From assembly GCF_001194135.2 (NCBI RefSeq), contig NC_068984.1, forward strand, positions 23,174,822-23,238,821: a stretch of 64,000 bases of DNA, in the 5' to 3' direction. Below the pieces are notes generated by a model. That model searched no databases, had not been told where the DNA came from, and saw only the letters and a program-made list of their open reading frames with translations. Of this stretch, positions 7,858-61,749 are shown one piece after another (positions within the stretch are counted from its first letter, which is position 1; each line of letters opens with the position of its first letter). The position numbers were made by a program, and so were the translations under genes. Source of the stretch: Octopus bimaculoides (taxonomy: Eukaryota).

Positions 7858-8199
7858 AATTACGGAGATGTACTTGCATAGTAAGTGACCTGATCTGAGA
7901 TTGTGTACTGGAACGAAAACAATTGCAGCGTGGAAGGTGTTTATAAGCCATTTAAAATAACACACAAAAGCCGTCAGATTCACTTCAACATTTAAATTTA
8001 ATTTGTCAAAATATTTTCGTCGCTTTGAGACCGCGACCTGTTCACTGACAAAATTGTGCAGCACAATTTTGTCAGTGAACAGGTCGCGGTCTCAAAGCGA
8101 CGAAAATATTTTGACAAATTAAATTTAAATGTTGAAGTGAATCTGACGGCTTTTGTGTGTTATTTTAAATGGCTTATAAACACCTTCCACGCTGCAATT
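7858..8199. repeat. Interspersed-repeat insertion containing a perfect palindrome (arms 7921-8059 and 8061-8199, 1-nt spacer), flanked by the direct repeat (att)ctacta
   Basis: The arms are exact reverse complements over 139 bp. attctacta occurs at 7849-7857 and 8197-8205. Confidence 0.9.
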
Positions 8200-15831: not shown

Positions 15832-15969
15832 TAGCTATCTCTCATTCCCTCTGTGTGTAGGCCCTGTCCTATTTAACATTGTCCCAAAACTGATCAAAGA
15901 GGAAAAGGATTCATTCCATCACCTTTAAACGGAGTCTGGACAGATTTCTTCAAGGAATACCAGACAAGC
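15832..15969 (+). mobile_element. CR1-like LINE 3' fragment
   Basis: Reverse-complement match to 17010-17157. Confidence 0.65.
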
Positions 15970-16328
15970 TAAAATTTAAAATTTTGCCTTCTTGCCGTTA
16001 AAAATGCAATGGGTATTGAGCATGTACACACACACCATATATATATATACATATATATAAAAGGTTGAAGAGGAAATATATATATATAACTGTTCGTTCA
16101 TTAAATGTGTTTTTCTATGCTAACATAGGTTGGACAGAAACACTTGGGACAAGATTTTACAACCGGATGCTTTTCTTGTTTTTTTTATTCCAGAGAGCTT
16201 TACAGCAACAGGTCATGTCATCAAGGAATGTCAACATCACTTCATCCAACACACACACCAGGGATTGGGGAAAAGAATCTTGTGATTAAAAGCTGATTTA
16301 TTAACAAATATGAAATGGAATATATATA

Positions 16329-16829
16329 TTCTTTTACTCTTTTTACTCAGTCATTTGACTGCAGCCATGCTGGAACACCGCCTTTTAGTCGAGCAAATTA
16401 ACCCCAGGACTTACTCTTTGTAAGCCTAGTACTTATTCTATCGGTCTCTTTTGCCGAACCGCTAATTTACGGAGACGCAAACGCACCAGCATCAGTTGGG
16501 TGGAACAAACACACACACACACAAACATATANNNNNNNNNNNNNNNNNNNNNNNNNNNNNNNNNNNNNNNNNNNNNNNNNNNNNNNNNNNNNNNNNNNNN
16601 NNNNNNNNNNNNNNNNNNNNNNNNNNNNNNNNNNNNNNNNNNNNNNNNNNNNNNNNNNNNNNNNNNNNNNNNNNNNNNNNNNNNNNNNNATATATATATA
16701 TATATATACGACGGGCTTCTTTCAGTTTCCGTTTACCAAATCTACTCACAAGGCTTTGGTCGTCCCGAGGCTATAGTAGAACCATGTGGTTGTTAAGCAA
16801 GCTACTTACCACACAGCCACTCCTGCGCC
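16329..16829 (-). mobile_element. SINE family A copy spanning an N-gap
   Basis: Head and tail both match the other family A copies; a small internal deletion removes the CORE-like segment. Confidence 0.8.
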
Positions 16830-16899
16830 TATTATATATAAAAACTTAGATAAAACTTAGATATGTTTCGACCAAAGATTGGTCTAGGCCATGTCTAAC

Positions 16900-17157
16900 T
16901 TAATAGCACCACCTGATAGGATTATCTAAATCCTTTTTAAGTCAAGTTTTGTTTATGGTCCATTCAAGTAGTGAGTTCTTGCTGTGTGAGTTGTATCCAG
17001 GTATGGGTGGCTTGTCTGGTAGTCCTTGAAGAAATCTGTCCAGACTCCGTTTAAAGGTGATGGAATCCTTTTCGTCTTTGATCAGTTTTGGGACAATGTG
17101 AAACAGGGCAGGGCCTACACACACACACACACACATACAGAGAATGAGAGATAGCTA
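16900..17157 (-). mobile_element. CR1-like LINE 3' end
   Basis: GPALFHIVPKLIKDEKDSITFKRSLDRFLQGLPDKPPIPGYNSHSKNSLLEW resembles the C-terminus of CR1-clade ORF2 (GPxLFN.LP...FK..LD.FL...PDxP). Confidence 0.7.
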
Positions 17158-19192
17158 TGTATAATATATTATTTATAAATTAAATGTACAGCTTTATCCA
17201 GCACAGAAGGCGGACTTTAAACGATGATGATGATGACTGTGTATATATGCATATATTTTAAACTTGAAACTATTATGATATATATATACACTCAGATATA
17301 CACACATTCATACATACAGCCAAACAGATATAAGATTTAGCATGAGGAAGAGAGTTGTGCAATATGACTACAAGAGGTACATATAAGTATATGTAGATAA
17401 TTTCACATAATATCTCCATACTTAGGTAGGAAAATATAAATAAAACACTTGAGATTAAATTAAAATTTTGAAATTTTTTTTTAACTAGACAGAGCTGTTA
17501 TTGTTACACACTGAATTACTATCTGGGTTTCCCCAACTTCAGTCTCTTGACTAAAAACGTGGGAAAAGAAAATTAGTAACCGCTAAGAGCTTGATTTCAT
17601 GATTTAGGAAAAGGAAAAAGATATCCTTTCATAAAATTTTTTTCGACCTTAGTAATTAATTACCAGTCTATAACATCAAACTTATAACACACACATGAAA
17701 TAAAAAGAAAAAAAGAAAAGATCTTATGGATTGTTTGAATATCACTATTGACCAAGAATCGAAAAAGATGAATGCCAATCGTTCCAGACATTTCATGCAA
17801 CTCGTTCTACCATCCAAGAAAGCAACATTCCTTTATTTGTAATGCCATTAAGTTTTCTTTTATAGAATTATCAACTTAAAAAAAAAAAAGATTAAGAGAG
17901 TGTAAAAAAAACTACGTGACTGCAAGTTTTCCGGGAAGACTTTTATTTCTTTTTAAATTTGAGAAGTTGTAATTCGTTCATTAAGGTAGACGTGGCGAAA
18001 TTTGGGTGAGTGCGGTCAGTAATGAGTGAAACCAGTTGAATTAGGCGCGAACTTTAAAAAGTATTAGTCTCACGTGTTGAACAGCTAACAATGACGCGAA
18101 TAAGTAACTTCCTTGTTAGGGAAGTCATTACTTTGCATTTATTCTATTTTAAAGAATTCGTTTAACTTAATACAAGGACATCCTTTAAAAGACGAAGTTA
18201 GCTTTGAGTTAAGAGTGAAGTTTGAAATGGAAAAGCTAATAAAAGTGACAAGTGGAGTGGTTAGTTGCGAATGATTAGACTCGGTACTAGCAGGCTGAAG
18301 TAAAAAATGGATTTTAATAGCGATCAAACGAAACCACTTGACATTAGATTTTTCCGTCAACTACACAAAGTTAAGAACAGAAATTCTGAGCTGTGTCTTG
18401 GTGAAGAGTCAGTGTTTGAGTGATGGATTGGTAGAATTGTTAGAGCTTTGGGGAAAAAAAAATGTTCAGCAATATTTTTTTTCCCGACGTTTTACACCAA
18501 ATCCAAATTCCCGCCGGAGCCAACTTTGCCTTTTGTCCTTCTGGAATCGATAATAACGTCTCAGTCAAATACTGAGGTCGATGAACTTAAATCAGAAACT
18601 TATATTTTCTAGTCAAATACTGATCTATTATAATTTTAGCCCACACCATCCTAATTTTTCCACATGAACATTATAACAAGGTTTAATGGGTTTGAAGGCA
18701 AAGTCGAAGTTCGCGAGATTTTCCACATCGGAATTGAAACCGCGAGCTAAATAAAATGTACTCTTAAAGCATTTTTCAGACGCAGTTGTCTCAAACATTG
18801 CCAATGCTTAATTTTTGATTCAATGTCTGGAGCATTCATATTGATTTTAGATATTTGAGATAATATTTAATAATGTTGTGTCTCTCCATGCCAGAAAAAA
18901 AAAAAGAAATTTTAAAAAATAGATTCATAGTCAAATATTAGTTTCAAACATATGATTAGAAGTAATTAGCAATGTTCCAAAGCTTGACACTGCACTGAAA
19001 TAAATTCTACAAGTATTCTCTAAAAGTATCTTTGAACTGCGTATAAACAATAAATGGATCCAAGCACTCGTTAATCTGGCTTTGTAATCGATTTATTTTT
19101 TCAATGATTAATAGCTATTTATTGATTTCTTTTTTAGCTATCGAAGTCAATAGACATTATGAAGAATGTATGTATATAGTCATCCCCCTATC

Positions 19193-21294: not shown

Positions 21295-23575
21295 CGAGAG
21301 ACAGATAAATATACATGTATACACTATATATATATATATACATCACAATGCGGAACATGAATAATACTATGAAAGAATCTAATGTCCTCTCAACATGATT
21401 TTTTATGATTTTTACCGTTACAATGAAACCGGTAAATGGAGGGAAAGTAGCGATAGAAGAAAGTAGAAANNNNNNNNNNNNNNNNNNNNNNNNNNNNNNN
21501 NNNNNNNNNNNNNNNNNNNNNNNNNNNNNNNNNNNNNNNNNNNNNNNNNNNNNNNNNNNNNNNNNNNNNNNNNNNNNNNNNNNNNNNNNNNNNNNNNNNN
21601 NNNNNNNNNNNNNNNNNNNNNNNNNNNNNNNNNNNNNNNNNNNNNNNNNNNNNNNNNNNNNNNNNNNNNNNNNNNNNNNNNNNNNNNNNNNNNNNNNNNN
21701 NNNNNNNNNNNNNNNNNNNNNNNNNNNNNNNNNNNNNNNNNNNNNNNNNNNNNNNNNNNNNNNNNNNNNNNNNNNNNNNNNNNNNNNNNNNNNNNNNNNN
21801 NNNNNNNNNNNNNNNNNNNNNNNNNNNNNNNNNNNNNNNNNNNNNNNNNNNNNNNNNNNNNNNNNNNNNNNNNNNNNNNNNNNNNNNNNNNNNNNNNNNN
21901 NNNNNNNNNNNNNNNNNNNNNNNNNNNNNNNNNNNNNNNNNNNNNNNNNNNNNNNNNNNNNNNNNNNNNNNNNNNNNNNNNNNNNNNNNNNNNNNNNNNN
22001 NNNNNNNNNNNNNNNNNNNNNNNNNNNNNNNNNNNNNNNNNNNNNNNNNNNNNNNNNNNNNNNNNNNNNNNNNNNNNNNNNNNNNNNNNNNNNNNNNNNN
22101 NNNNNNNNNNNNNNNNNNNNNNNNNNNNNNNNNNNNNNNNNNNNNNNNNNNNNNNNNNNNNNNNNNNNNNNNNNNNNNNNNNNNNNNNNNNNNNNNNNNN
22201 NNNNNNNNNNNNNNNNNNNNNNNNNNNNNNNNNNNNNNNNNNNNNNNNNNNNNNNNNNNNNNNNNNNNNNNNNNNNNNNNNNNNNNNNNNNNNNNNNNNN
22301 NNNNNNNNNNNNNNNNNNNNNNNNNNNNNNNNNNNNNNNNNNNNNNNNNNNNNNNNNNNNNNNNNNNNNNNNNNNNNNNNNNNNNNNNNNNNNNNNATAT
22401 ATATATATATATATATATATAATATGTATGTATGTATGTATATTTATATATAAACGTATGTATGTGTATAACTCGCATTTTCAGAGAATATATTTAAAGG
22501 ACATCTGCATTATGTATGTAGACAATAAGACAAATTATTCCGATGGCCATTTATATTGCGTTGAACCACGAAACACCCACACATCCAAACACAAAGAGAA
22601 TAGCATTTAATATCACGAAATCATACATATACAGACGTAGATATATAAATATACCTACAAATACATACAGATATATGGAATCGTGTCTGATTAGCTTTAA
22701 TTGATTACACAAAGACACATAAATGTACATGCACACAGACAAGCACGTTTTATTTTTCTGTGCAATACACCCGAGCAGTTAATGCAACGTGAGTGCACTG
22801 ATGCTGCGGGTACATCAGCACATAATTGCAGTAGAAACCAAGGTTTATATTCATCTTTTTTTCTTTCTTTTTCTTTTTTTGTCTTTCTTGTGTATATATG
22901 TGTGTATGTATTTCAGAGATAGATAGCTGCCCTGATATAAGTTGCTGCAGGTGATGAAAACTGAAGAGAAATGAGGGAAAAGGAAGATGTAATCGGGTCT
23001 TTCAGTTCATTTTGCCGGCTTCGCCTAAAGAGACTGAACACTAAAACCTAATTAACGCGTGAAGTAAAAGGATTATTTTTTTCTACCATTATTATTATTA
23101 TTATCAATATCATTATTATTATCATTATTATTATTATTATTATTTCTAATGACTATGTTAAAAATCATTATTATTACAACTAAATCTCGCTCTAATATTT
23201 TATATTCCTATGTTCCGTCATGTGGTGCATTGTCAGTAGACTGAATTCTAAAACGCCATGCATTTCGATTCCCTTTTTAAGTAAGGAGTTACTTGTAAAT
23301 GTTATTACAGAAGTAAACCACTAGAACAAATTACATATATATATATATAGCTATAAAAAAAAAAGAAACAAATTAGGAGACAGGTGCTTAACTTGTGTAA
23401 GGATACATTATATTAATCTGTACAGGCTAGAAAATGAAATTGAAAAGAATCAATCAATGAAAAGTGTTAGATCGATCTAATAATATTTTTTTTGGCAGAT
23501 TATATATATAATGTATATATACATATATATGTATATATTGTCAAATGAGCTGGGGGTTTTCTTTGATTTACCCAC

Positions 23576-23795
23576 CATTAAATTTTTTGCCCTCAGGTTG
23601 TTCGTTGTCCCCAGCGTTCCCCCACGCATCGGCTTCCTCTTCGTCTTGATCGGGTTCGAAGGGGCGATTCCGCGCCTGCGGCTGTGCACTTGACAACTCG
23701 TTCTCCGCGTTCAGGGGGTCGTTGACGCTGTACTCGGGGGGGCACTCGTCAACCGGGACAGGAACCCCCGGCGCAGGAACCATTTTGGTGGGTAC
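23576..23795 (-). CDS. SLC34A: N-terminal cytoplasmic exon of the same SLC34 gene: VPTKMVPAPGVPVPVDECPPEYSVNDPLNAENELSSAQPQARNRPFEPDQDEEEADAWGNAGDNEQPEGKKFN(A); ATG at 23783
   Basis: About 60% GC (132/220) open frame in AT-rich DNA. Acceptor atgatgcag|GTA; donor AAT G|gtgggt (phase 1), and G+CC gives Ala into the TM1 exon. The DAW...KKFNALGTSDKVVR junction parallels the DPW...WSELD..K region preceding TM1 in SLC34 proteins. Confidence 0.82.
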
Positions 23796-24270
23796 CTGCA
23801 TCATTTATGATCACAGATTAACAGCTTCTCACCACATCTCACCACATTATTATAAATCATGTAAACAAAACATACACGTTTATTTTTATAAATTAAAAAA
23901 AGAAAAAGAAAAGAAACTAATCTGTAAAAAAAGAATAAAAGAGAAAACATTATAAATACGGGGAAAACGCAATAATATATAATACAAGACAAAAAATATC
24001 TGTTGCGTTTTTTTTAATCTCAAAGAAAAATAGCACATATAATTAAGAGAACATATATTTGTATATATATAGTGGTGACACTATAGGTAGATATGTTTGA
24101 CTAAAGACTAGAAAATATATGCATATATATGTAGCTTTGTTTTTTTTTTAATTTTTTTATTTTTGTCTTTTGTTTTAATAAATTATATATATATATATAT
24201 CTAAATTGTAGCTCAAAGGAAAGAGTGACGGAATAAAATAGTGGAATTAATATAGCAGTTTTATACTTAC

Positions 24271-26200: not shown

Positions 26201-26419
26201 TCAAAAGTTCTCCGGTAATTTTCTTTCATGTAAATAAATGTCTATGATAATCTAAGAGTTTGCCAGCAAAATCTTATAAAATGACTATGTTCTAAAAGAA
26301 AAAGAAAAACAAAAAAAAACTGATATACTGTTTAATACATCTGCAGATGATGTTTTTTTCTTTTGTTTTGTTTTTTTGTATGTCGTACTGGATTGATATA
26401 ATCATAATCTAGTTTAGAC

Positions 26420-27016
26420 CAGGGGTTTTCAAACTGTGGTCCGCGGACCACAGGGGGTCCGCAAGGATAAGACAGGGGGTCCGTGGACAGCAAATACTTT
26501 TTATGGGCAATTTGATTTAATATATGTTTTTTAATCGAAATCTTTTAATTGACAATAAACCTATTTGTTAAATACTGTTAAATAAATAAATGTAAAAATA
26601 TATGTTATTTTAAGCAAATATTTATGTATAAATTTCACAAGTGGGTACTACTAAAGCAGCGCGGACCCGAACGCGCAGTCGCGCGTCCGCGCTAGCTAGT
26701 CTTGAGTGGTCGATCCTAACCCTAACCCTATCCCTAACCCTAACCCTAACCCTAACCCTAACCCTANNNNNNNNNNNNNNNNNNNNNNNNNNNNNNNNNN
26801 NNNNNNNNNNNNNNNNNNNNNNNNNNNAATACGTGTTTAGGGTAGGGTTAGGGTTAGGAATAGGGTTAGGGTTAGGATCGACCACTCACGACTAGCTAGC
26901 GCGGACGCGCGACTGCGCGTTCGGGTCCGCGCTGCTTTAGTAGTACCTCACAAGTGTCTATAAGGTAAAGCCTGAAATTAAAGGGGTCTGCAAGTCAAAA
27001 AGTTTGAAAACCCCTG
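26420..27016. mobile_element. hAT (Charlie/Buster-type) MITE carrying a nested insertion
   Basis: Perfect 16-bp TIR CAGGGGTTTTCAAACT / AGTTTGAAAACCCCTG. Perfect 8-bp TSD gtttagac (26412-26419 and 27017-27024). Confidence 0.92.
26644..26947. mobile_element. Foldback (MULE-like) element bearing inward telomeric repeats
   Basis: ~105-bp TIRs with 2 mismatches, beginning GGTACTACTAAAGCAGCGCGG. 9-bp TSD tcacaagtg (26635-26643 and 26948-26956). (CCCTAA)n on the left, (TTAGGG)n on the right, N-gap 26767-26827 in the centre. Confidence 0.88.
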
Positions 27017-28007
27017 GTTTAGACAATAAATGCATCTTTTACATTTAAGGTATTTGCAATTACCTTTTTTTTTTTTTTTATTTTGTCTATATATTTTTTA
27101 ATATTTTGTGTACATGCATGTGATTATGCTTATGGGATTTGAATGTGTGTATATGTGCGCGCGCGTTTTTGCTAAAATGTAATTAAACAGTATCCTTCAC
27201 GGAGAATAGTTATCTCAGAGACGTCATCTGCATCGAAAACAACAGGAAAGTTAGAACTATCGTATCTAATGCTGGCAGGGCCTATGAAAGAGTTAGGTGA
27301 GTTCAGCGAGTGCATTAGTCTAGGGTTTGGAAATCTCTGAAAAGTCTCCTTGGATTCATGACAAGAGTAGGATCTCCCATTTCCGAGGGGTAGAAGGAAA
27401 GCAACTTTGTTTCGTCATGCAGTATTTCATTTAGAGACCCCGAGTGCAGGTTGGGAGAGGGGCATAAAAAAAACAGTTAACTAGAAACGAAGGATCACCT
27501 GAAGAATCGCTACTCTTCAGACGGGATGTCCAGCCATGATGAATCTTCAGGTGTTAACGCCTGGGATAATACTATTTCAGGTGAGCTCAGGACAAGGTCA
27601 GAACACTGAAACATCACATCGATGTATCATCATCCACAACAGCAGCGCCATTACCAGCGCCAAAATTAAGGTCATCTTTATAACACCAATACCATCATCA
27701 TTACTACCACATTCATTACCTCCATCACGATCACCACTTCCAACAACAGCATCGGCACGTCGGCACTACTACCACCACACCATCACCATTGACACTTGCT
27801 CCACTAACACTATTACAACCACTAATGACACTGATATCCCTATCACTACCAGCATCGCAACCACCACCACCACCACTACCACCACCATCAAAGGGTGAAT
27901 GAAATCCGAAAAGAAAGGAAAGAAAGAAAATTAGAGTTACGCCCCCTTCGACCGCAGAAATTATAATTAAACTAACTGCTGTAGAATACTTCAACGGAAT
28001 TATATAC

Positions 28008-28598: not shown

Positions 28599-29181
28599 AG
28601 AAACTTTACTTTCGGATCTTTTTTAAAACGGGGCCACATTTTTCATTAATGTTTTACGTAGTGTTTTTGGTACCGAAAGACTTTCAAACTTCGTATACTT
28701 ATCTATTTTGTGTTATAGAACAGAAAAATATTTTTGTATTCGAATTTATTTCATGTAAAAAATTGTCTTATTTCGATAATTTCAACCAATCACTGACAAG
28801 CATTCAGCTGTTTATATTTACTCCTTTGGCTGATTAAGCGGTGTAAAGCGTATTTAATTTCCATAGCTTCGTTTTGCTTTCTTCTTTTTAAATTTGCTGT
28901 TTTACCCTAACCCTAACCCTATCACCGATAGAATTGTTTCAGAATCGTTTGTTTATGTAGTCGGCACTTAATGTATATCGGCTGAATGGACGTCAGTGAT
29001 TGGTTGAAATTACAGAAATACGACAACTTTAACGTGGAATAACTTAGGGATTTCCTTTTTTTTTTAAGAAGACTAAGAGAAAAAGATGTTTTATATGACA
29101 CATTCTACCAGTGTTCCAAGTTTCAAAGTGTTTCGTTAATGAAAAATGTGACCCCCGTTTTAAAAAAGATCCTTACTTTCT
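28599..29181. mobile_element. MITE with long imperfect TIRs, possibly Kolobok-like (ttaa|AG...CT|ttat), with an internal short CCCTAA run
   Basis: ggatcttttttaaaacggggccacatttttcattaa is mirrored by ttaatgaaaaatgtgacccccgttttaaaaaagatcc, and ttcaaccaatcactgac by gtcagtgattggttgaa. ccctaaccctaaccct lies at ~28905-28920. Confidence 0.7.
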
Positions 29182-36245: not shown

Positions 36246-37131
36246 NNNNNNNNNNNNNNNNNNNNNNNNNNNNNNNNNNNNNNNNNNNNNNNNNNNNNNN
36301 NNNNNNNNNNNNNNNNNNNNNNNNNNNNNNNNNNNNNNNNNNNNNNNNNNNNNNNNNNNNNNNNNNNNNNNNNNNNNNNNNNNNNNNNNNNNNNNNNNNN
36401 NNNNNNNNNNNNNNNNNNNNNNNNNNNNNNNNNNNNNNNNNNNNNNNNNNNNNNNNNNNNNNNNNNNNNNNNNNNNNNNNNNNNNNNNNNNNNNNNNNNN
36501 NNNNNNNNNNNNNNNNNNNNNNNNNNNNNNNNNNNNNNNNNNNNNNNNNNNNNNNNNNNNNNNNNNNNNNNNNNNNNNNNNNNNNNNNNNNNNNNNNNNN
36601 NNNNNNNNNNNNNNNNNNNNNNNNNNNNNNNNNNNNNNNNNNNNNNNNNNNNNNNNNNNNNNNNNNNNNNNNNNNNNNNNNNNNNNNNNNNNNNNNNNNN
36701 NNNNNNNNNNNNNNNNNNNNNNNNNNNNNNNNNNNNNNNNNNNNNNNNNNNNNNNNNNNNNNNNNNNNNNNNNNNNNNNNNNNNNNNNNNNNNNNNNNNN
36801 NNNNNNNNNNNNNNNNNNNNNNNNNNNNNNNNNNNNNNNNNNNNNNNNNNNNNNNNNNNNNNNNNNNNNNNNNNNNNNNNNNNNNNNNNNNNNNNNNNNN
36901 NNNNNNNNNNNNNNNNNNNNNNNNNNNNNNNNNNNNNNNNNNNNNNNNNNNNNNNNNNNNNNNNNNNNNNNNNNNNNNNNNNNNNNNNNNNNNNNNNNNN
37001 NNNNNNNNNNNNNNNNNNNNNNNNNNNNNNNNNNNNNNNNNNNNNNNNNNNNNNNNNNNNNNNNNNNNNNNNNNNNNNNNNNNNNNNNNNNNNNNNNNNN
37101 NNNNNNNNNNNNNNNNNNNNNNNNNNNAGGG

Positions 37132-46891: not shown

Positions 46892-48616
46892 NNNNNNNNN
46901 NNNNNNNNNNNNNNNNNNNNNNNNNNNNNNNNNNNNNNNNNNNNNNNNNNNNNNNNNNNNNNNNNNNNNNNNNNNNNNNNNNNNNNNNNNNNNNNNNNNN
47001 NNNNNNNNNNNNNNNNNNNNNNNNNNNNNNNNNNNNNNNNNNNNNNNNNNNNNNNNNNNNNNNNNNNNNNNNNNNNNNNNNNNNNNNNNNNNNNNNNNNN
47101 NNNNNNNNNNNNNNNNNNNNNNNNNNNNNNNNNNNNNNNNNNNNNNNNNNNNNNNNNNNNNNNNNNNNNNNNNNNNNNNNNNNNNNNNNNNNNNNNNNNN
47201 NNNNNNNNNNNNNNNNNNNNNNNNNNNNNNNNNNNNNNNNNNNNNNNNNNNNNNNNNNNNNNNNNNNNNNNNNNNNNNNNNNNNNNNNNNNNNNNNNNNN
47301 NNNNNNNNNNNNNNNNNNNNNNNNNNNNNNNNNNNNNNNNNNNNNNNNNNNNNNNNNNNNNNNNNNNNNNNNNNNNNNNNNNNNNNNNNNNNNNNNNNNN
47401 NNNNNNNNNNNNNNNNNNNNNNNNNNNNNNNNNNNNNNNNNNNNNNNNNNNNNNNNNNNNNNNNNNNNNNNNNNNNNNNNNNNNNNNNNNNNNNNNNNNN
47501 NNNNNNNNNNNNNNNNNNNNNNNNNNNNNNNNNNNNNNNNNNNNNNNNNNNNNNNNNNNNNNNNNNNNNNNNNNNNNNNNNNNNNNNNNNNNNNNNNNNN
47601 NNNNNNNNNNNNNNNNNNNNNNNNNNNNNNNNNNNNNNNNNNNNNNNNNNNNNNNNNNNNNNNNNNNNNNNNNNNNNNNNNNNNNNNNNNNNNNNNNNNN
47701 NNNNNNNNNNNNNNNNNNNNNNNNNNNNNNNNNNNNNNNNNNNNNNNNNNNNNNNNNNNNNNNNNNNNNNNNNNNNNNNNNNNNNNNNNNNNNNNNNNNN
47801 NNNNNNNNNNNNNTATATATATGTATATATATATACATACATACATACATACATACATACATACATACATACATACATACATACATACATACATACATTA
47901 TCAAGCATTGTCCATAAGTCAAATAAAAAAACACAATCCGTATAAAAGCAAGAATATTTTTTTATATTATTGGTATGGTATATACTTGTACAGAATGTTA
48001 CCGTCGGTTTCGCGAAGATATTACTACTCGATAATGTTGATGACTCTTCAGACATTCTGTCTGGAAGTGTATAGTCTCTTTGATGTTGAAGTTTATACAT
48101 TTAGACTCTAAGTATATATACATTAAGTTGCCTCAGTGGTGGTAATAAACGGAATGAAACATAGTGAAAAAAAGAAAACAATTTTGGTAGGGTAGGAAAG
48201 AAGAGATATTCTCTATGGATTGGTGTTAGCCATTGGTCAAGCATGTAAACTGTGTGTGTATATATCTCGTTCCCTGTCACCAAAATGAATTTATGCTCAT
48301 AAAGTCAGCATCCGAGAATTTCATTTTTCGAGTTGAGTGTGTTGACATAGGAATATTCCAGAGTGTGCGTCACCTGCTTTCATTAAAATACGACCCAGAA
48401 AAATCCCGCAATCTCCAGATGATCCTATATGGCGTTTCTTCTTTTAATCGTCAAATACAACTGGCTAAAGTTGCAACATTACGCCTTATTTAAATTCTAA
48501 AAGAGGGTCTCTGACTATTCAGCCTTGCCTTATAAGGGGCCTTCTGCTGCTCCGACGTAATTCCTCTTCTGCGTCATCCATAGATGTTGATCGACACTGC
48601 TTCTGCTTCGTAGGCC

Positions 48617-59049: not shown

Positions 59050-60560
59050 CTATCAAGCGTACCCAGCGTTGCCCGGTGTCGTTAGTTCGAAAAGGCTGAG
59101 AAACAAATAAAGTAATTAACACCCCCTCCCTTAAACACCTTTCACGCTTTATGGCAAGACTAACACCTTAGTAACTCTTAAAGGGAACTGCACGTGTAAT
59201 ATTACGACAACAATCAAGTGAAAAAATAAGCAACAAAAATTATAAAAACAATAACGTAGGACTGAAATTTGGCGCCAGTACGGCAAGTCTACAAAACTTC
59301 CTTGTAAACAACATTTTTAGTCTTCCCCTGGGGGATGAAAGCATGTAAACTGTTCCTACAATCCACTCTTGAGCAGCCAACGTACAGTTGACCGTGTGAA
59401 AAGCATGGTTCGGCTAAGTAAAGTCCAACGACAGACAGCGACTGCCCTTGGGGCTTATTAATAGACATGGCGTAACTGAGTCTAATCGGAAACTGCACTC
59501 TGCGGAATGTGAACGGTAAGTCAGCAGCCGAAGGCACGAGGGGAGTTCGCGGTATGAAGACGTCTTGATCTTTACCACAGACGGTCATAATCGTTGCTTC
59601 AATGATATTGGGAAGTAATTTTGTGATAACAAGGCGTGTATCGTTGCACAACGTCGGTGGATTTAAATTCTTTATTAGCATAACAGGGCTACCTACTTTA
59701 AAAGTAAGAATATGTGGAGGTACACCTGAAGGCTCCAATGTATTCAAAAATTCAGTGGAGTAATCAACTACCTCATCCTGATTGGTAATGGTGTCTACTG
59801 ACTTATAAACTGTCACGTCCCCAGGCAAACGCAGTAAAAATCTGTTGTTGATTGCACTGACCGCAACGTTTTTAGGAGCCAAAATGGCTCTTTGTCAAAG
59901 CCAATCTCGATCTCCGTTGTGGACTTCTAAGCCTAGGAAGACCTGGTCCTGAAGGCTCTGGATAGTACTGGTTATTGTGCAAATGTTACTTATGTCAACA
60001 ACTTCATTTCCGTCTTCTGGAACTTCACCATTGCAAAGAAGGAGAATGTCCCTCGCAAAATCTTCTGAAAATGACTCCTCATGGAGACGCGCTCTCATGT
60101 TGGATTCTAACTGCAAAGTAACAACATAACCCCATAGAAGTGAAGACTTAAGACACGCCATTACTTCATTCGCCCTTGTGCCTTTCGAAATCACTGGCAA
60201 GGTTTGTCTATCTGGATAGCACGACAGTGACATCCCCGCATCGGTTCGTGGCTTTTCTTTGTGTCTCGCAAAGTTCTATCTAATGCCTCAAAGGCACCCT
60301 TGTGATCCATTGTGCATTCATCCCAAACAATCTGCGCGAGCAATTGCCCGTTGTCCAACGTCTTTGAAATGTTGCAAACAGGCGTTGGTGAACTTGCGAG
60401 GTTAAGGGGGAAGCTTAAACGAAGAGTGTGCAGTCGTACCACCAGGGAGCAGAGTAGCAGCTATGCTCGAAGTTGCCACAGCTATTGCGATGCACTTTTG
60501 TAGCCTTACTTTTGCAAGAATGAGTCTAGTTACGAACGTTTTGCCTGTCCCGCCAGGCAA
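59050..60560 (-). mobile_element. Helitron fragment: PIF1-family helicase pseudogene plus 3' terminus
   Basis: Walker A PGGTGKTF (~60541-60558), WDECTM, DRQTLPVI, NMR, and the ORF 59289-59882 ending QFPIRLSYAMSINKPQGQSL...FSHGQLYVGCSRV...TKNVVYKEVL. The 3' end reads ccgggcaacgctgggtac...atag|t (minus strand), a variant of the hairpin+CTAG terminus. Confidence 0.95.
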
Positions 60561-61749
60561 AACGAAAAATAACGAAAAACAACACAAACGAAAACAAACA
60601 GCAAGTGGTAATAAGTAGTACAACGTTACTAAGGCTAGGGAAATGGGGTAACAATAACGATAAGCAAAAATTCAACAGTAGAATAATCTCTGCACAAAAA
60701 AGTGAACCGAAACGTAGGACAGGGAGTACTGAGGTAGAACGCAGCACGGAGGTCCGAAGCGTAAGTGAAGCGTTCGTATAAAAACGTTCAAGTAATGGGA
60801 CCATGAGTCGAAAGAGTACATACTATTGGCTAAAGGCCAACCAACAGGAGGAGCAAAACTGTTCAAGTGAACGTGAAACAGGTGAGTCATGCAGTGGGAG
60901 GAGTTGTAAGTAATTGTAGTAACAATTGCTGAGAAGTGTGGTAATCTGTGATAATCACTGACAGGTGGGGGGTCAGTGTCGATTGTAAGGTGCGGGAGGG
61001 AGAAATTATGTGATTTGTAATAATCACTGATAAGAAGTATGCCTCGGTGTCACCTGACGCTAGGGTGACATTGAGGGTGGGGGAAGGAGACCCGAGTCTA
61101 CTGCAGCAACAATTTGACCTCTTTGAAAGTCCGATAGATCTGTCATTTCAATGAATTTTAATTACCTTTTTTCTGATCATATCTGAAAAGGAACAGCAAT
61201 TTTAGCAAATCATATTAAGCAACACGAATTATAAATCAAAAAACACAAAAATAAACAAGCTTTTATAGATATTTCAAAATAGATATTTCAAAATAATGAT
61301 GCTATGATGCTAGGGGTTTCCATTATCTTGTTCAACCCCTGTAAATGTGACATATTTTAACTTTAACCGTAATTTCATTGCAAAAGTGTTAAAAAAAACA
61401 TCTTTTACCATGAGTGAGAACTTTATCTCCACGGTAAACTGCAATGAAATTGCTTTTAGAAACATCAAGGGCAAGTGATTTTTACTGTCTCTTTGGATGA
61501 TCAGTAACGTATCCGTAGAATAATATAGCCGGAAGCTGTCACGAAAGCCTATCGCATGTATACACCCACCACACACACACACACACAGTTGGGCACCGTC
61601 TGTGAGAAAAATTTACTCGGCATGCTGTACTGTTTGGCATTCGCGCCGGAAGCTCCAATACGAACATTTCAGAGTGTTTGGGTATCAATCTGAGGACAGT
61701 GCAATCTGAAGACGTGTACCGAGAGTAATAGAAATCAAATACCTAGTCA

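What the first reader, a model, noticed from the sequence alone, without database searches (positions are those of the whole stretch)
26644..26947. Telomere-bearing foldback transposon: TIR-(CCCTAA)n ... (TTAGGG)n-TIR with a perfect 9-bp TSD
Seen: ~105-bp terminal inverted repeats (2 mismatches), made of a 71-bp GC-rich unique cap followed by telomeric hexamers, flanked by the identical 9-mer tcacaagtg. The cap holds its own strong hairpin (AGCGCGGAC...GTCCGCGCT) followed by AGCTAG. The arrays read CCCTAA (left) then TTAGGG (right), which is the polarity of the two ends of a linear chromosome and the opposite of a telomere fusion scar. Established: 9-bp TSDs with long TIRs mark Mutator/MULE and foldback elements; TTAGGG is the general metazoan/molluscan telomere repeat; telomere-bearing transposons (TBEs) are known from ciliates. 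Inference: a young non-autonomous DNA transposon that disperses interstitial telomeric seeds. It could bind telomere proteins, form G-quadruplexes or a cruciform, or seed de novo telomere addition if cut inside the TIRs. Intact CpGs, near-identical arms and a perfect TSD argue for recent insertion. The true internal length is hidden by the gap.
Basis: partly seen in the sequence, partly recalled or inferred. Interest (0 to 1): 0.85.

Follow-up and report, generated by a model that had tools for sequence, protein, structure and literature searches.

The report
Foldback transposon carrying telomere repeats
A small, recently inserted "cut-and-paste" jumping gene in an octopus genome has mirror-image ends, each a 71-base GC-rich tip followed by a short run of the animal's telomere repeat. 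It looks like an unusual variant of a known transposon type, not a new kind of element, and only this one copy could be examined.

Summary
Two 71-nt GC-rich caps (26644-26714 and 26877-26947) are reverse complements at 70/71. Each is followed inward by telomere-type hexamers, CCCTAA on the left and TTAGGG on the right. A perfect 9-bp direct repeat, TCACAAGTG, flanks the whole.

The N gap (26767-26827) lies at the centre of the palindrome. The join across it is supported because the element sits inside a hAT-like MITE. That MITE's own inverted ends and perfect 8-bp target duplication (GTTTAGAC) lie on opposite sides of the gap.

The anatomy is an outer unique motif, then subterminal tandem repeats whose number differs between arms, with a 9-bp target duplication. 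This is the published anatomy of foldback-type Mutator-like elements (Rehavkus, Tm1, Muta1). Merlin elements (8-9 bp duplication, terminal 5'-GG) are not excluded.

The unusual part is that the subterminal repeat is the host telomere hexamer.

I could not test copy number, find a transposase partner, see an empty site or check Repbase/Dfam, because no octopus genome could be searched by DNA. No second copy occurs in the window or in about 82 kb of other octopus DNA. Telomere-related functions remain speculation.

Verdict: a real, young, non-autonomous TIR transposon and a new variant of a known kind. Interest is moderate.

The parts
26635..26643 (.). Left copy of the 9-bp target-site duplication TCACAAGTG
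   Evidence: Read directly. Identical to 26948-26956.
26644..26714 (+). Left terminal cap: 71 nt, 62% G+C, starts 5'-GG. This is the outer unique part of the TIR.
   Evidence: 70/71 complementary to 26877-26947. CpG observed/expected 1.62.
26658..26693 (+). Internal hairpin of the left cap (AGCGCGGAC ... GTCCGCGCT with an inner ACGCGC/GCGCGT stem), followed by GCTAGCTAG
   Evidence: DNA fold -19.3 kcal/mol, z -2.76.
26715..26766 (+). Left subterminal array of CCCTAA-type hexamers (at least 8.7 units, one CCCTAT variant), cut off by the gap
   Evidence: TRF period 6, 95% matches; sequence.
26767..26827 (.). Assembly gap (61 N, length estimated) at the centre of symmetry of the foldback
   Evidence: The two arms share reverse-complement k-mers, which is my inferred explanation for a short-read contig break exactly here.
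26828..26835 (+). Only known non-repeat internal bases (AATACGTG)
26837..26876 (+). Right subterminal array of TTAGGG-type hexamers (6.8 units, degenerate). It has fewer units than the left array.
   Evidence: TRF; arm alignment.
26877..26947 (-). Right terminal cap, the reverse complement of the left cap
26948..26956 (.). Right copy of the 9-bp target-site duplication TCACAAGTG
26412..26435 (+). Host element, left end: 8-bp TSD GTTTAGAC (26412-26419) plus TIR CAGGGGTTTTCAAACT (26420-26435) of a hAT-like MITE that received the insertion
   Evidence: (pair I8). The TIR is 16/16 and the TSD 8/8 against the right end.
27001..27024 (-). Host element, right end: TIR AGTTTGAAAACCCCTG (27001-27016) plus 8-bp TSD GTTTAGAC (27017-27024)
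   Evidence: It lies on the other side of the gap from its partner, so the scaffold join is correct.

Best explanation
This is a short, non-autonomous, foldback-type cut-and-paste DNA transposon in an Octopus genome. It inserted recently into an older hAT-like MITE.

Each terminal inverted repeat is composite. It has a 71-nt GC-rich outer motif with its own hairpin, which is presumably the transposase recognition and cleavage end. Inward of that lies a subterminal tandem array whose unit happens to be the host telomere hexamer.

A DDE transposase supplied in trans is not encoded in this window. It is most likely Mutator-like (Rehavkus/Foldback group), with Merlin as the alternative. It would bind the ends, excise the element and integrate it at a 9-bp staggered cut, and repair of that cut made the TCACAAGTG duplication.

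The two arms are copies of one another, since they share the CCCTAT variant in the same register. They have since changed in repeat number, as foldback TIRs do.

Shown here: the TIRs, the TSD, the nesting in the host MITE, the arm-to-arm register and the young age. Inferred: the enzyme family, any role of the hexamers as binding or spacer repeats, and membership of a multi-copy family.
For: - TIR: cap 70/71 and 103/105 over cap plus array. With the gap removed, the strand folds into one hairpin at -146.7 kcal/mol, z = -29.9.
- TSD: an exact 9-bp TSD.
- Nesting: the element interrupts a MITE whose 16-nt TIRs and perfect 8-bp TSD lie on either side of the gap. This validates both the insertion and the scaffold join.
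- The arms are independent sequence, with 2 substitutions and different array lengths, so one contig was not used twice.
- Young age: cap CpG observed/expected is 1.6 against 0.69 for the window.
- Published parallels for the same anatomy:
  - Tm1 has an outer motif, a variable number of tandem repeats per arm and a 9-bp TSD (PMC3169594).
  - Muta1 has a terminal motif, 9 subterminal repeats, an 8/9-bp TSD, and is called a 'type 2 Foldback' (PMC5225508).
  - Rehavkus has a 9-bp TSD and long TIRs with variable subterminal tandem repeats (PMC6446971; bioRxiv 10.1101/2024.12.02.626372).
- Not a contaminant or vector: the cap has no exact match in bacterial/archaeal genomes, viral contigs or metagenomes and no BLAST match in plasmids.
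- The host is an Octopus: a Helitron helicase ORF is 83-87% identical to O. bimaculoides and O. sinensis proteins.
Against: - Only one copy was seen. There is no second cap or related terminus in the 64-kb window or in four other octopus loci of about 82 kb.
- No transposase is present in the window.
- The interior is hidden by the gap.
- TSD length and the terminal GG do not separate MULE from Merlin.
- A contiguous 6-bp unit is shorter than the 9-15 bp subterminal repeats described for animal MULEs.
Confidence: 0.7

Rival explanations
1. It is the same kind of element but belongs to the Merlin superfamily (IS1595-like DDE transposase), not to Mutator/Rehavkus.
For: Merlin elements have TIRs of 24-462 bp with a conserved terminal 5'-GG and 8- or 9-bp TSDs (PMC8101967). 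This element starts GGTACT... and has a 9-bp TSD.
Against: The composite TIR, with an outer motif plus subterminal tandem repeats whose number differs between arms, is the described hallmark of foldback-type MULEs. It is not a defining trait of Merlin. Neither assignment can be decided without a transposase.
Confidence: 0.17
2. It is an assembly artefact: a false palindromic join of two contigs that both end in telomere-like repeats.
For: The gap sits exactly at the centre of symmetry (pair I1). The scaffold comes from a short-read assembly with 16 gaps in 64 kb. A second, 100% perfect palindrome of 279 bp lies at 7921-8199.
Against: The flanks form a direct 9-bp repeat and are not inverted. 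The host MITE's TIRs and its 8-bp TSD pair up across the gap. The arms differ by substitutions and array length, so they were assembled independently.
Confidence: 0.04
3. It is a one-off capture of a palindromic or hairpin DNA fragment at a staggered double-strand break, with no transposase and no family. An example would be a snap-back extrachromosomal fragment carrying telomere repeats.
For: Only one copy is known. Fill-in of a staggered break can also give a short direct repeat (inference).
Against: The inverted repeat ends exactly at the duplication on both sides. It has a structured GC- and CpG-rich terminal motif foreign to the 36% G+C surroundings. A 9-bp duplication at exact TIR tips is the signature of transposase-mediated integration.
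Confidence: 0.06
4. It is an interstitial telomeric sequence left by telomerase-mediated break repair or by an ancestral telomere-telomere fusion.
For: It contains TTAGGG-type hexamers, the telomere repeat general to metazoans and molluscs (established knowledge).
Against: A fusion would read (TTAGGG)n(CCCTAA)n on one strand, whereas here the order is the opposite. Neither process produces 71-nt inverted caps or a 9-bp TSD. The arrays share a variant in register, so they are mirror copies.
Confidence: 0.03

Closest known systems
Foldback-type Mutator-like elements: Rehavkus (Tribolium and other invertebrates), Tm1 (Meloidogyne), Muta1 (Aedes), Drosophila FB
   Same: All share the 9-bp (8-9 bp) TSD and long composite TIRs built from an outer unique motif plus subterminal tandem repeats. 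The repeat number differs between the two arms and between copies. Short non-autonomous derivatives consist of little more than the TIRs.
   Different: - The repeat unit here is 6 bp and identical to the host telomere repeat. The described units are 9-15 bp (Muta families), about 14 bp (Tm1) or satellite monomers (Rehavkus), none of them telomeric.
- The outer unique motif is long (71 nt) and carries a GC-rich hairpin.
- No transposase partner is known, so membership is unproven.
Merlin superfamily MITEs
   Same: 8-9 bp TSD, terminal 5'-GG, and a TIR length within 24-462 bp.
   Different: Subterminal tandem arrays are not a described family trait. No IS1595-type transposase is linked to this element.
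Ciliate telomere-bearing elements (Oxytricha TBE1-3; Tetrahymena Tel-1)
   Same: These are transposons with the host telomere repeat inside their inverted ends. The C-rich strand reads 5'->3' at the left end, which is the same polarity as here (Tel-1 from my own knowledge).
   Different: - In TBEs the telomeric repeat is the outermost 17 nt of the TIR. Here it lies inside a 71-nt cap.
- TBEs are autonomous Tc1/mariner elements with a 3-bp ANT duplication. They are eliminated during macronuclear development.
- This element is a roughly 0.3-kb non-coding element with a 9-bp TSD in an animal.
Telomere-associated retroelements (Penelope-like Athena/Terminons; MoTeR, CNL1)
   Same: They carry short stretches of the host telomere repeat.
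   Different: They are retroelements that attach to or target chromosome ends. They have no TIRs and no 9-bp TSD. The resemblance is unrelated in mechanism.

Membership tests
Mutator-like / Rehavkus / Foldback (MuDR superfamily) | Target-site duplication of 8-11 bp, typically 9 bp | tested here: met
   Perfect 9-bp TCACAAGTG at 26635-26643 and 26948-26956. Criterion taken from PMC6446971.
Mutator-like / Rehavkus / Foldback (MuDR superfamily) | Long composite TIRs: a terminal motif plus subterminal tandem repeats, with variable copy number between arms | tested here: met
   A 71-nt cap plus at least 8.7 hexamers on the left against 6.8 on the right. Criterion taken.
Mutator-like / Rehavkus / Foldback (MuDR superfamily) | An autonomous relative with the same termini that encodes a MULE/Rehavkus DDE transposase | not testable with these tools
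   No transposase domain was found in the window ORFs scanned against Pfam. No octopus genome can be searched by DNA with these tools.
Mutator-like / Rehavkus / Foldback (MuDR superfamily) | Multiple dispersed copies, each with its own TSD | tested here: inconclusive
   No other copy in the 64-kb window or in L001-L004 (about 82 kb). This bounds the density but says nothing about a 2.7-Gb genome (genome size from my own knowledge).
Merlin | 8- or 9-bp TSD, TIR of 24-462 bp, conserved terminal 5'-GG | tested here: met
   9-bp TSD. The TIR is at least 105 nt. The termini are GGTACT.../...AGTACC. Criterion taken from PMC8101967.
Merlin | A DDE_Tnp_IS1595 transposase in autonomous copies | not testable with these tools
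   Same limitation as for the MULE partner.
Ciliate telomere-bearing elements (TBE) | Telomeric repeats form the extreme tips of the TIRs | tested here: not met
   The hexamers begin 71 nt inside each end. TBE TIRs start with CAAAACCCCAAAACCCC.
Ciliate telomere-bearing elements (TBE) | Tc1/mariner transposase and a 3-bp ANT target duplication | tested here: not met
   The TSD is 9 bp, and there is no coding capacity in the roughly 0.3-kb element.
hAT | 8-bp TSD | tested here: not met
   The element's TSD is exactly 9 bp. By contrast the host MITE (26412-27024) does have an 8-bp TSD and CAGGGG... ends.
Telomere-fusion or telomerase-repair interstitial telomeric sequence | Head-to-head (TTAGGG)n(CCCTAA)n, or a single-orientation array, without TIRs or a TSD | tested here: not met
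   The order is CCCTAA...TTAGGG, with 71-nt inverted caps and a 9-bp TSD.

The most novel reading that the evidence does not exclude
This would be one member of an active metazoan family of foldback transposons that specifically carry the host telomere repeat in chromosome-end polarity. It would be an animal counterpart of the ciliate telomere-bearing elements. Under this reading the arrays are functional. They might recruit telomere-binding proteins to protect or tether the excised linear element. Or breakage at the cap/array junction might expose ready-made telomere seeds. The family would then be a source of interstitial telomeric sites and potential neo-telomeres in cephalopod genomes.
Probability: 0.1. 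Interest if true: 0.8.

Novelty: new variant of a known kind. Interest (0 to 1): 0.4.

Why it matters
Suppose the family is real and multi-copy. It would then show that a DNA transposon can spread short telomere-repeat blocks through an animal genome. That gives one concrete origin for short interstitial telomeric sequences, which are usually put down to fusion or repair events.

It would also add a mollusc example to foldback-type MULE-like elements. These are described mostly from insects, nematodes and annelids.

There is a practical point for assembly work. Such foldbacks break short-read contigs and plant telomere-like strings inside scaffolds, where they can be mistaken for mis-joins or chromosome ends.

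As it stands, this is a single well-formed insertion. The functional ideas are untested.

Tried and rejected
1. Finding other copies through the protein collections. I translated the two open frames through the cap and searched them as a pseudo-protein. There were no hits, so such ORFs are not in that collection.
2. Exact-pattern scans with the cap hairpin and with the cap/array junction. They found nothing in bacterial/archaeal genomes, viral contigs or metagenomes. BLAST of the cap against plasmids also found nothing. The cap is therefore not a contaminant or vector, but these collections do not hold octopus DNA.
3. Reaching the same or the orthologous locus in another assembly, to close the gap or see an empty site.
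   - Exact look-ups of four window ORFs failed.
   - A GC-rich exon-like ORF (23571-23804, minus strand) had no homologue. That was the last protein search.
4. Fetching other octopus DNA around Helitron-derived genes (L001-L004). It contains neither the cap, nor the terminal 11-mer in a TSD-flanked pair, nor the host MITE.
5. Rfam search of 26300-27200. Nothing relevant was found, so the cap is not a known RNA gene fragment.
6. Pfam scans of 20 window ORFs. Only Helitron Pif1 helicase fragments matched, and no transposase did.
7. Literature searches for a TIR transposon with telomere repeats in an animal. They returned only ciliate TBEs and telomere-associated retroelements. Repbase and Dfam themselves could not be consulted.
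8. Readings rejected: telomere-fusion scar (wrong polarity, plus TIRs and a TSD), and hAT membership of the element itself (its TSD is 9 bp, not 8).

Full report
**1. What is there**

The sequence at 26635-26956 reads as follows:
- TCACAAGTG
- a 71-nt cap, 26644-26714
- CCCTAA-type hexamers, 26715-26766
- 61 N, 26767-26827
- AATACGTG, 26828-26835
- TTAGGG-type hexamers, 26837-26876
- the reverse-complement cap, 26877-26947
- TCACAAGTG

The caps match at 70/71. Over cap plus array the arms match at 103/105 before an indel in the hexamers. Both arms carry the variant unit CCCTAT in the same register. The arrays are therefore part of the inverted repeat and were copied arm to arm.

The terminal 24-mer occurs only at these two sites, with none expected in shuffles. 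The direct repeat is exactly 9 bp.

The cap is 62% G+C with CpG observed/expected 1.6, in a window of 36% G+C and 0.69. With the gap removed, the whole element folds into one hairpin of -146.7 kcal/mol (z -29.9).

**2. The gap**

The window is a short-read scaffold with 16 N runs. The gap lies at the centre of symmetry, which is where I would expect a k-mer assembler to break a foldback (inference).

Continuity across the gap cannot be read directly, but three facts argue for it:
- The flanks are a direct repeat, not an inverted one.
- The arms differ by two substitutions and in array length, so they are independent sequence.
- The element lies inside a second transposon. This hAT-like MITE has ends CAGGGGTTTTCAAACT (26420-26435) and AGTTTGAAAACCCCTG (27001-27016), and its perfect 8-bp duplication GTTTAGAC lies at 26412-26419 and 27017-27024. 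These features sit on opposite sides of the gap.

The join is therefore correct, and the structure is a nested insertion. The internal length and content remain unknown.

**3. Source**

A Helitron Pif1-helicase remnant (59289-59882, minus strand) is 83-87% identical to Octopus bimaculoides and O. sinensis proteins (Pfam hits). The host is an Octopus genome. TTAGGG is the telomere repeat general to metazoans and molluscs (established knowledge, not tested here).

**4. What it is**

The structure has exact TIR tips abutting a 9-bp duplication, a foreign GC- and CpG-rich terminal motif, and a nested position in another MITE. Together these are the signature of a DDE-transposase insertion.

The anatomy is an outer unique motif, then subterminal tandem repeats with different copy numbers in the two arms, with a 9-bp TSD. 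It matches published foldback-type Mutator-like elements:
- Tm1 in Meloidogyne (PMC3169594)
- Muta1 and its relatives in Aedes, called 'type 2 Foldback' (PMC5225508)
- Rehavkus (PMC6446971; bioRxiv 10.1101/2024.12.02.626372)

However, Merlin elements also make 8-9 bp TSDs and start with 5'-GG (PMC8101967), as this element does. Without a transposase the superfamily is open. I put it at roughly 3:1 for MULE-like, because of the composite TIR.

**5. How it most likely works**

A transposase encoded elsewhere recognises the 71-nt ends, excises the element and integrates it at a 9-bp staggered cut. No transposase was found in the window.

In foldback MULEs the subterminal repeats are associated with transposase binding and higher excision, as cited. 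The hexamers could play that part, or they could be a captured microsatellite. This step is inference.

The polarity, CCCTAA on the left and TTAGGG on the right, matches chromosome ends and the ciliate TBEs. It is also one of only two possible outcomes once one arm is mirrored onto the other, so it is weak evidence.

**6. What could not be done**

No eukaryotic genome could be searched by DNA.
- The cap has no exact match in bacterial/archaeal, viral or metagenome collections and no BLAST match in plasmids.
- A pseudo-protein search of the cap frames found nothing.
- Four other octopus loci (about 82 kb) hold no copy of the cap, of its terminal 11-mer in a TSD-flanked pair, or of the host MITE.
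- Attempts to reach the same or the orthologous locus failed.

Copy number, the autonomous partner, the empty site and prior cataloguing in Repbase/Dfam are therefore untested. The text searches found telomere repeats in transposon ends only for ciliate TBEs and for retroelements.

**7. Verdict**

This is a real, young, non-autonomous TIR transposon of the foldback type. The telomere hexamer serving as its subterminal repeat is an unusual variant of a known architecture, not a new kind of element. Claims about telomere seeding, protein binding or dispersal of telomeric seeds are untested.

Interest is 0.4. The reading that this is an animal analogue of telomere-bearing elements, with functional arrays, is not excluded (about 0.1) and would be notable if true.

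Noticed in passing
window 26412-27024: The host of the insertion is itself a hAT-like MITE. It has 16-nt perfect TIRs (CAGGGGTTTTCAAACT) and a perfect 8-bp TSD GTTTAGAC, and is about 290 bp long without the insert. No other copy was found in the window or in L001-L004.
   Followed up: partly
window 28904-28923; L001 3357-3374: A different repeat family carries a short internal (CCCTAA)2-3 block. The window copy lies inside nested inverted repeats (28759-28808/28981-29030 and 28614-28649/29136-29172). It is about 93% identical to an O. bimaculoides copy in L001 that has (CCCTAA)3 at the same place. Short telomere-like motifs therefore sit in more than one octopus repeat family.
   Followed up: partly
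window 7921-8199: A perfect 279-bp palindrome: 139-nt arms, 100% complementary, 1-nt spacer. It has no obvious TSD. Part of each arm resembles sequence next to the L001 copy of the family above (L001 3040-3075). It could be a real foldback or an assembly artefact.
   Followed up: no
window 15832-17160: Two inverted copies (93-98% over about 118 nt) of what looks like the 3' coding end of a LINE (translation ...FKRSLDRFLQGLPDKPP...). They flank a 158-N gap and SINE-like sequence.
   Followed up: no
window 59289-60671 (minus strand): A frameshifted Helitron-type Pif1 helicase remnant (Pfam PIF1 and Pif1_2B_dom). It is 88-89% identical at DNA level to copies in O. bimaculoides and O. sinensis.
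   Followed up: partly
window 23571-23804 (minus strand): A 78-codon ORF starting with ATG has 60% G+C in a 36% G+C region and looks like a first exon. It has no homologue in the protein collection, no Pfam match and no exact record.
   Followed up: partly
window, 16 N runs (e.g. 21470-22396, 36246-37127, 46892-47813): Many of the assembly gaps whose edges I looked at border di- or tetranucleotide microsatellites (TA, AC, CT, ATAC). The gap inside the finding is an exception, because it borders an inverted repeat.
   Followed up: no
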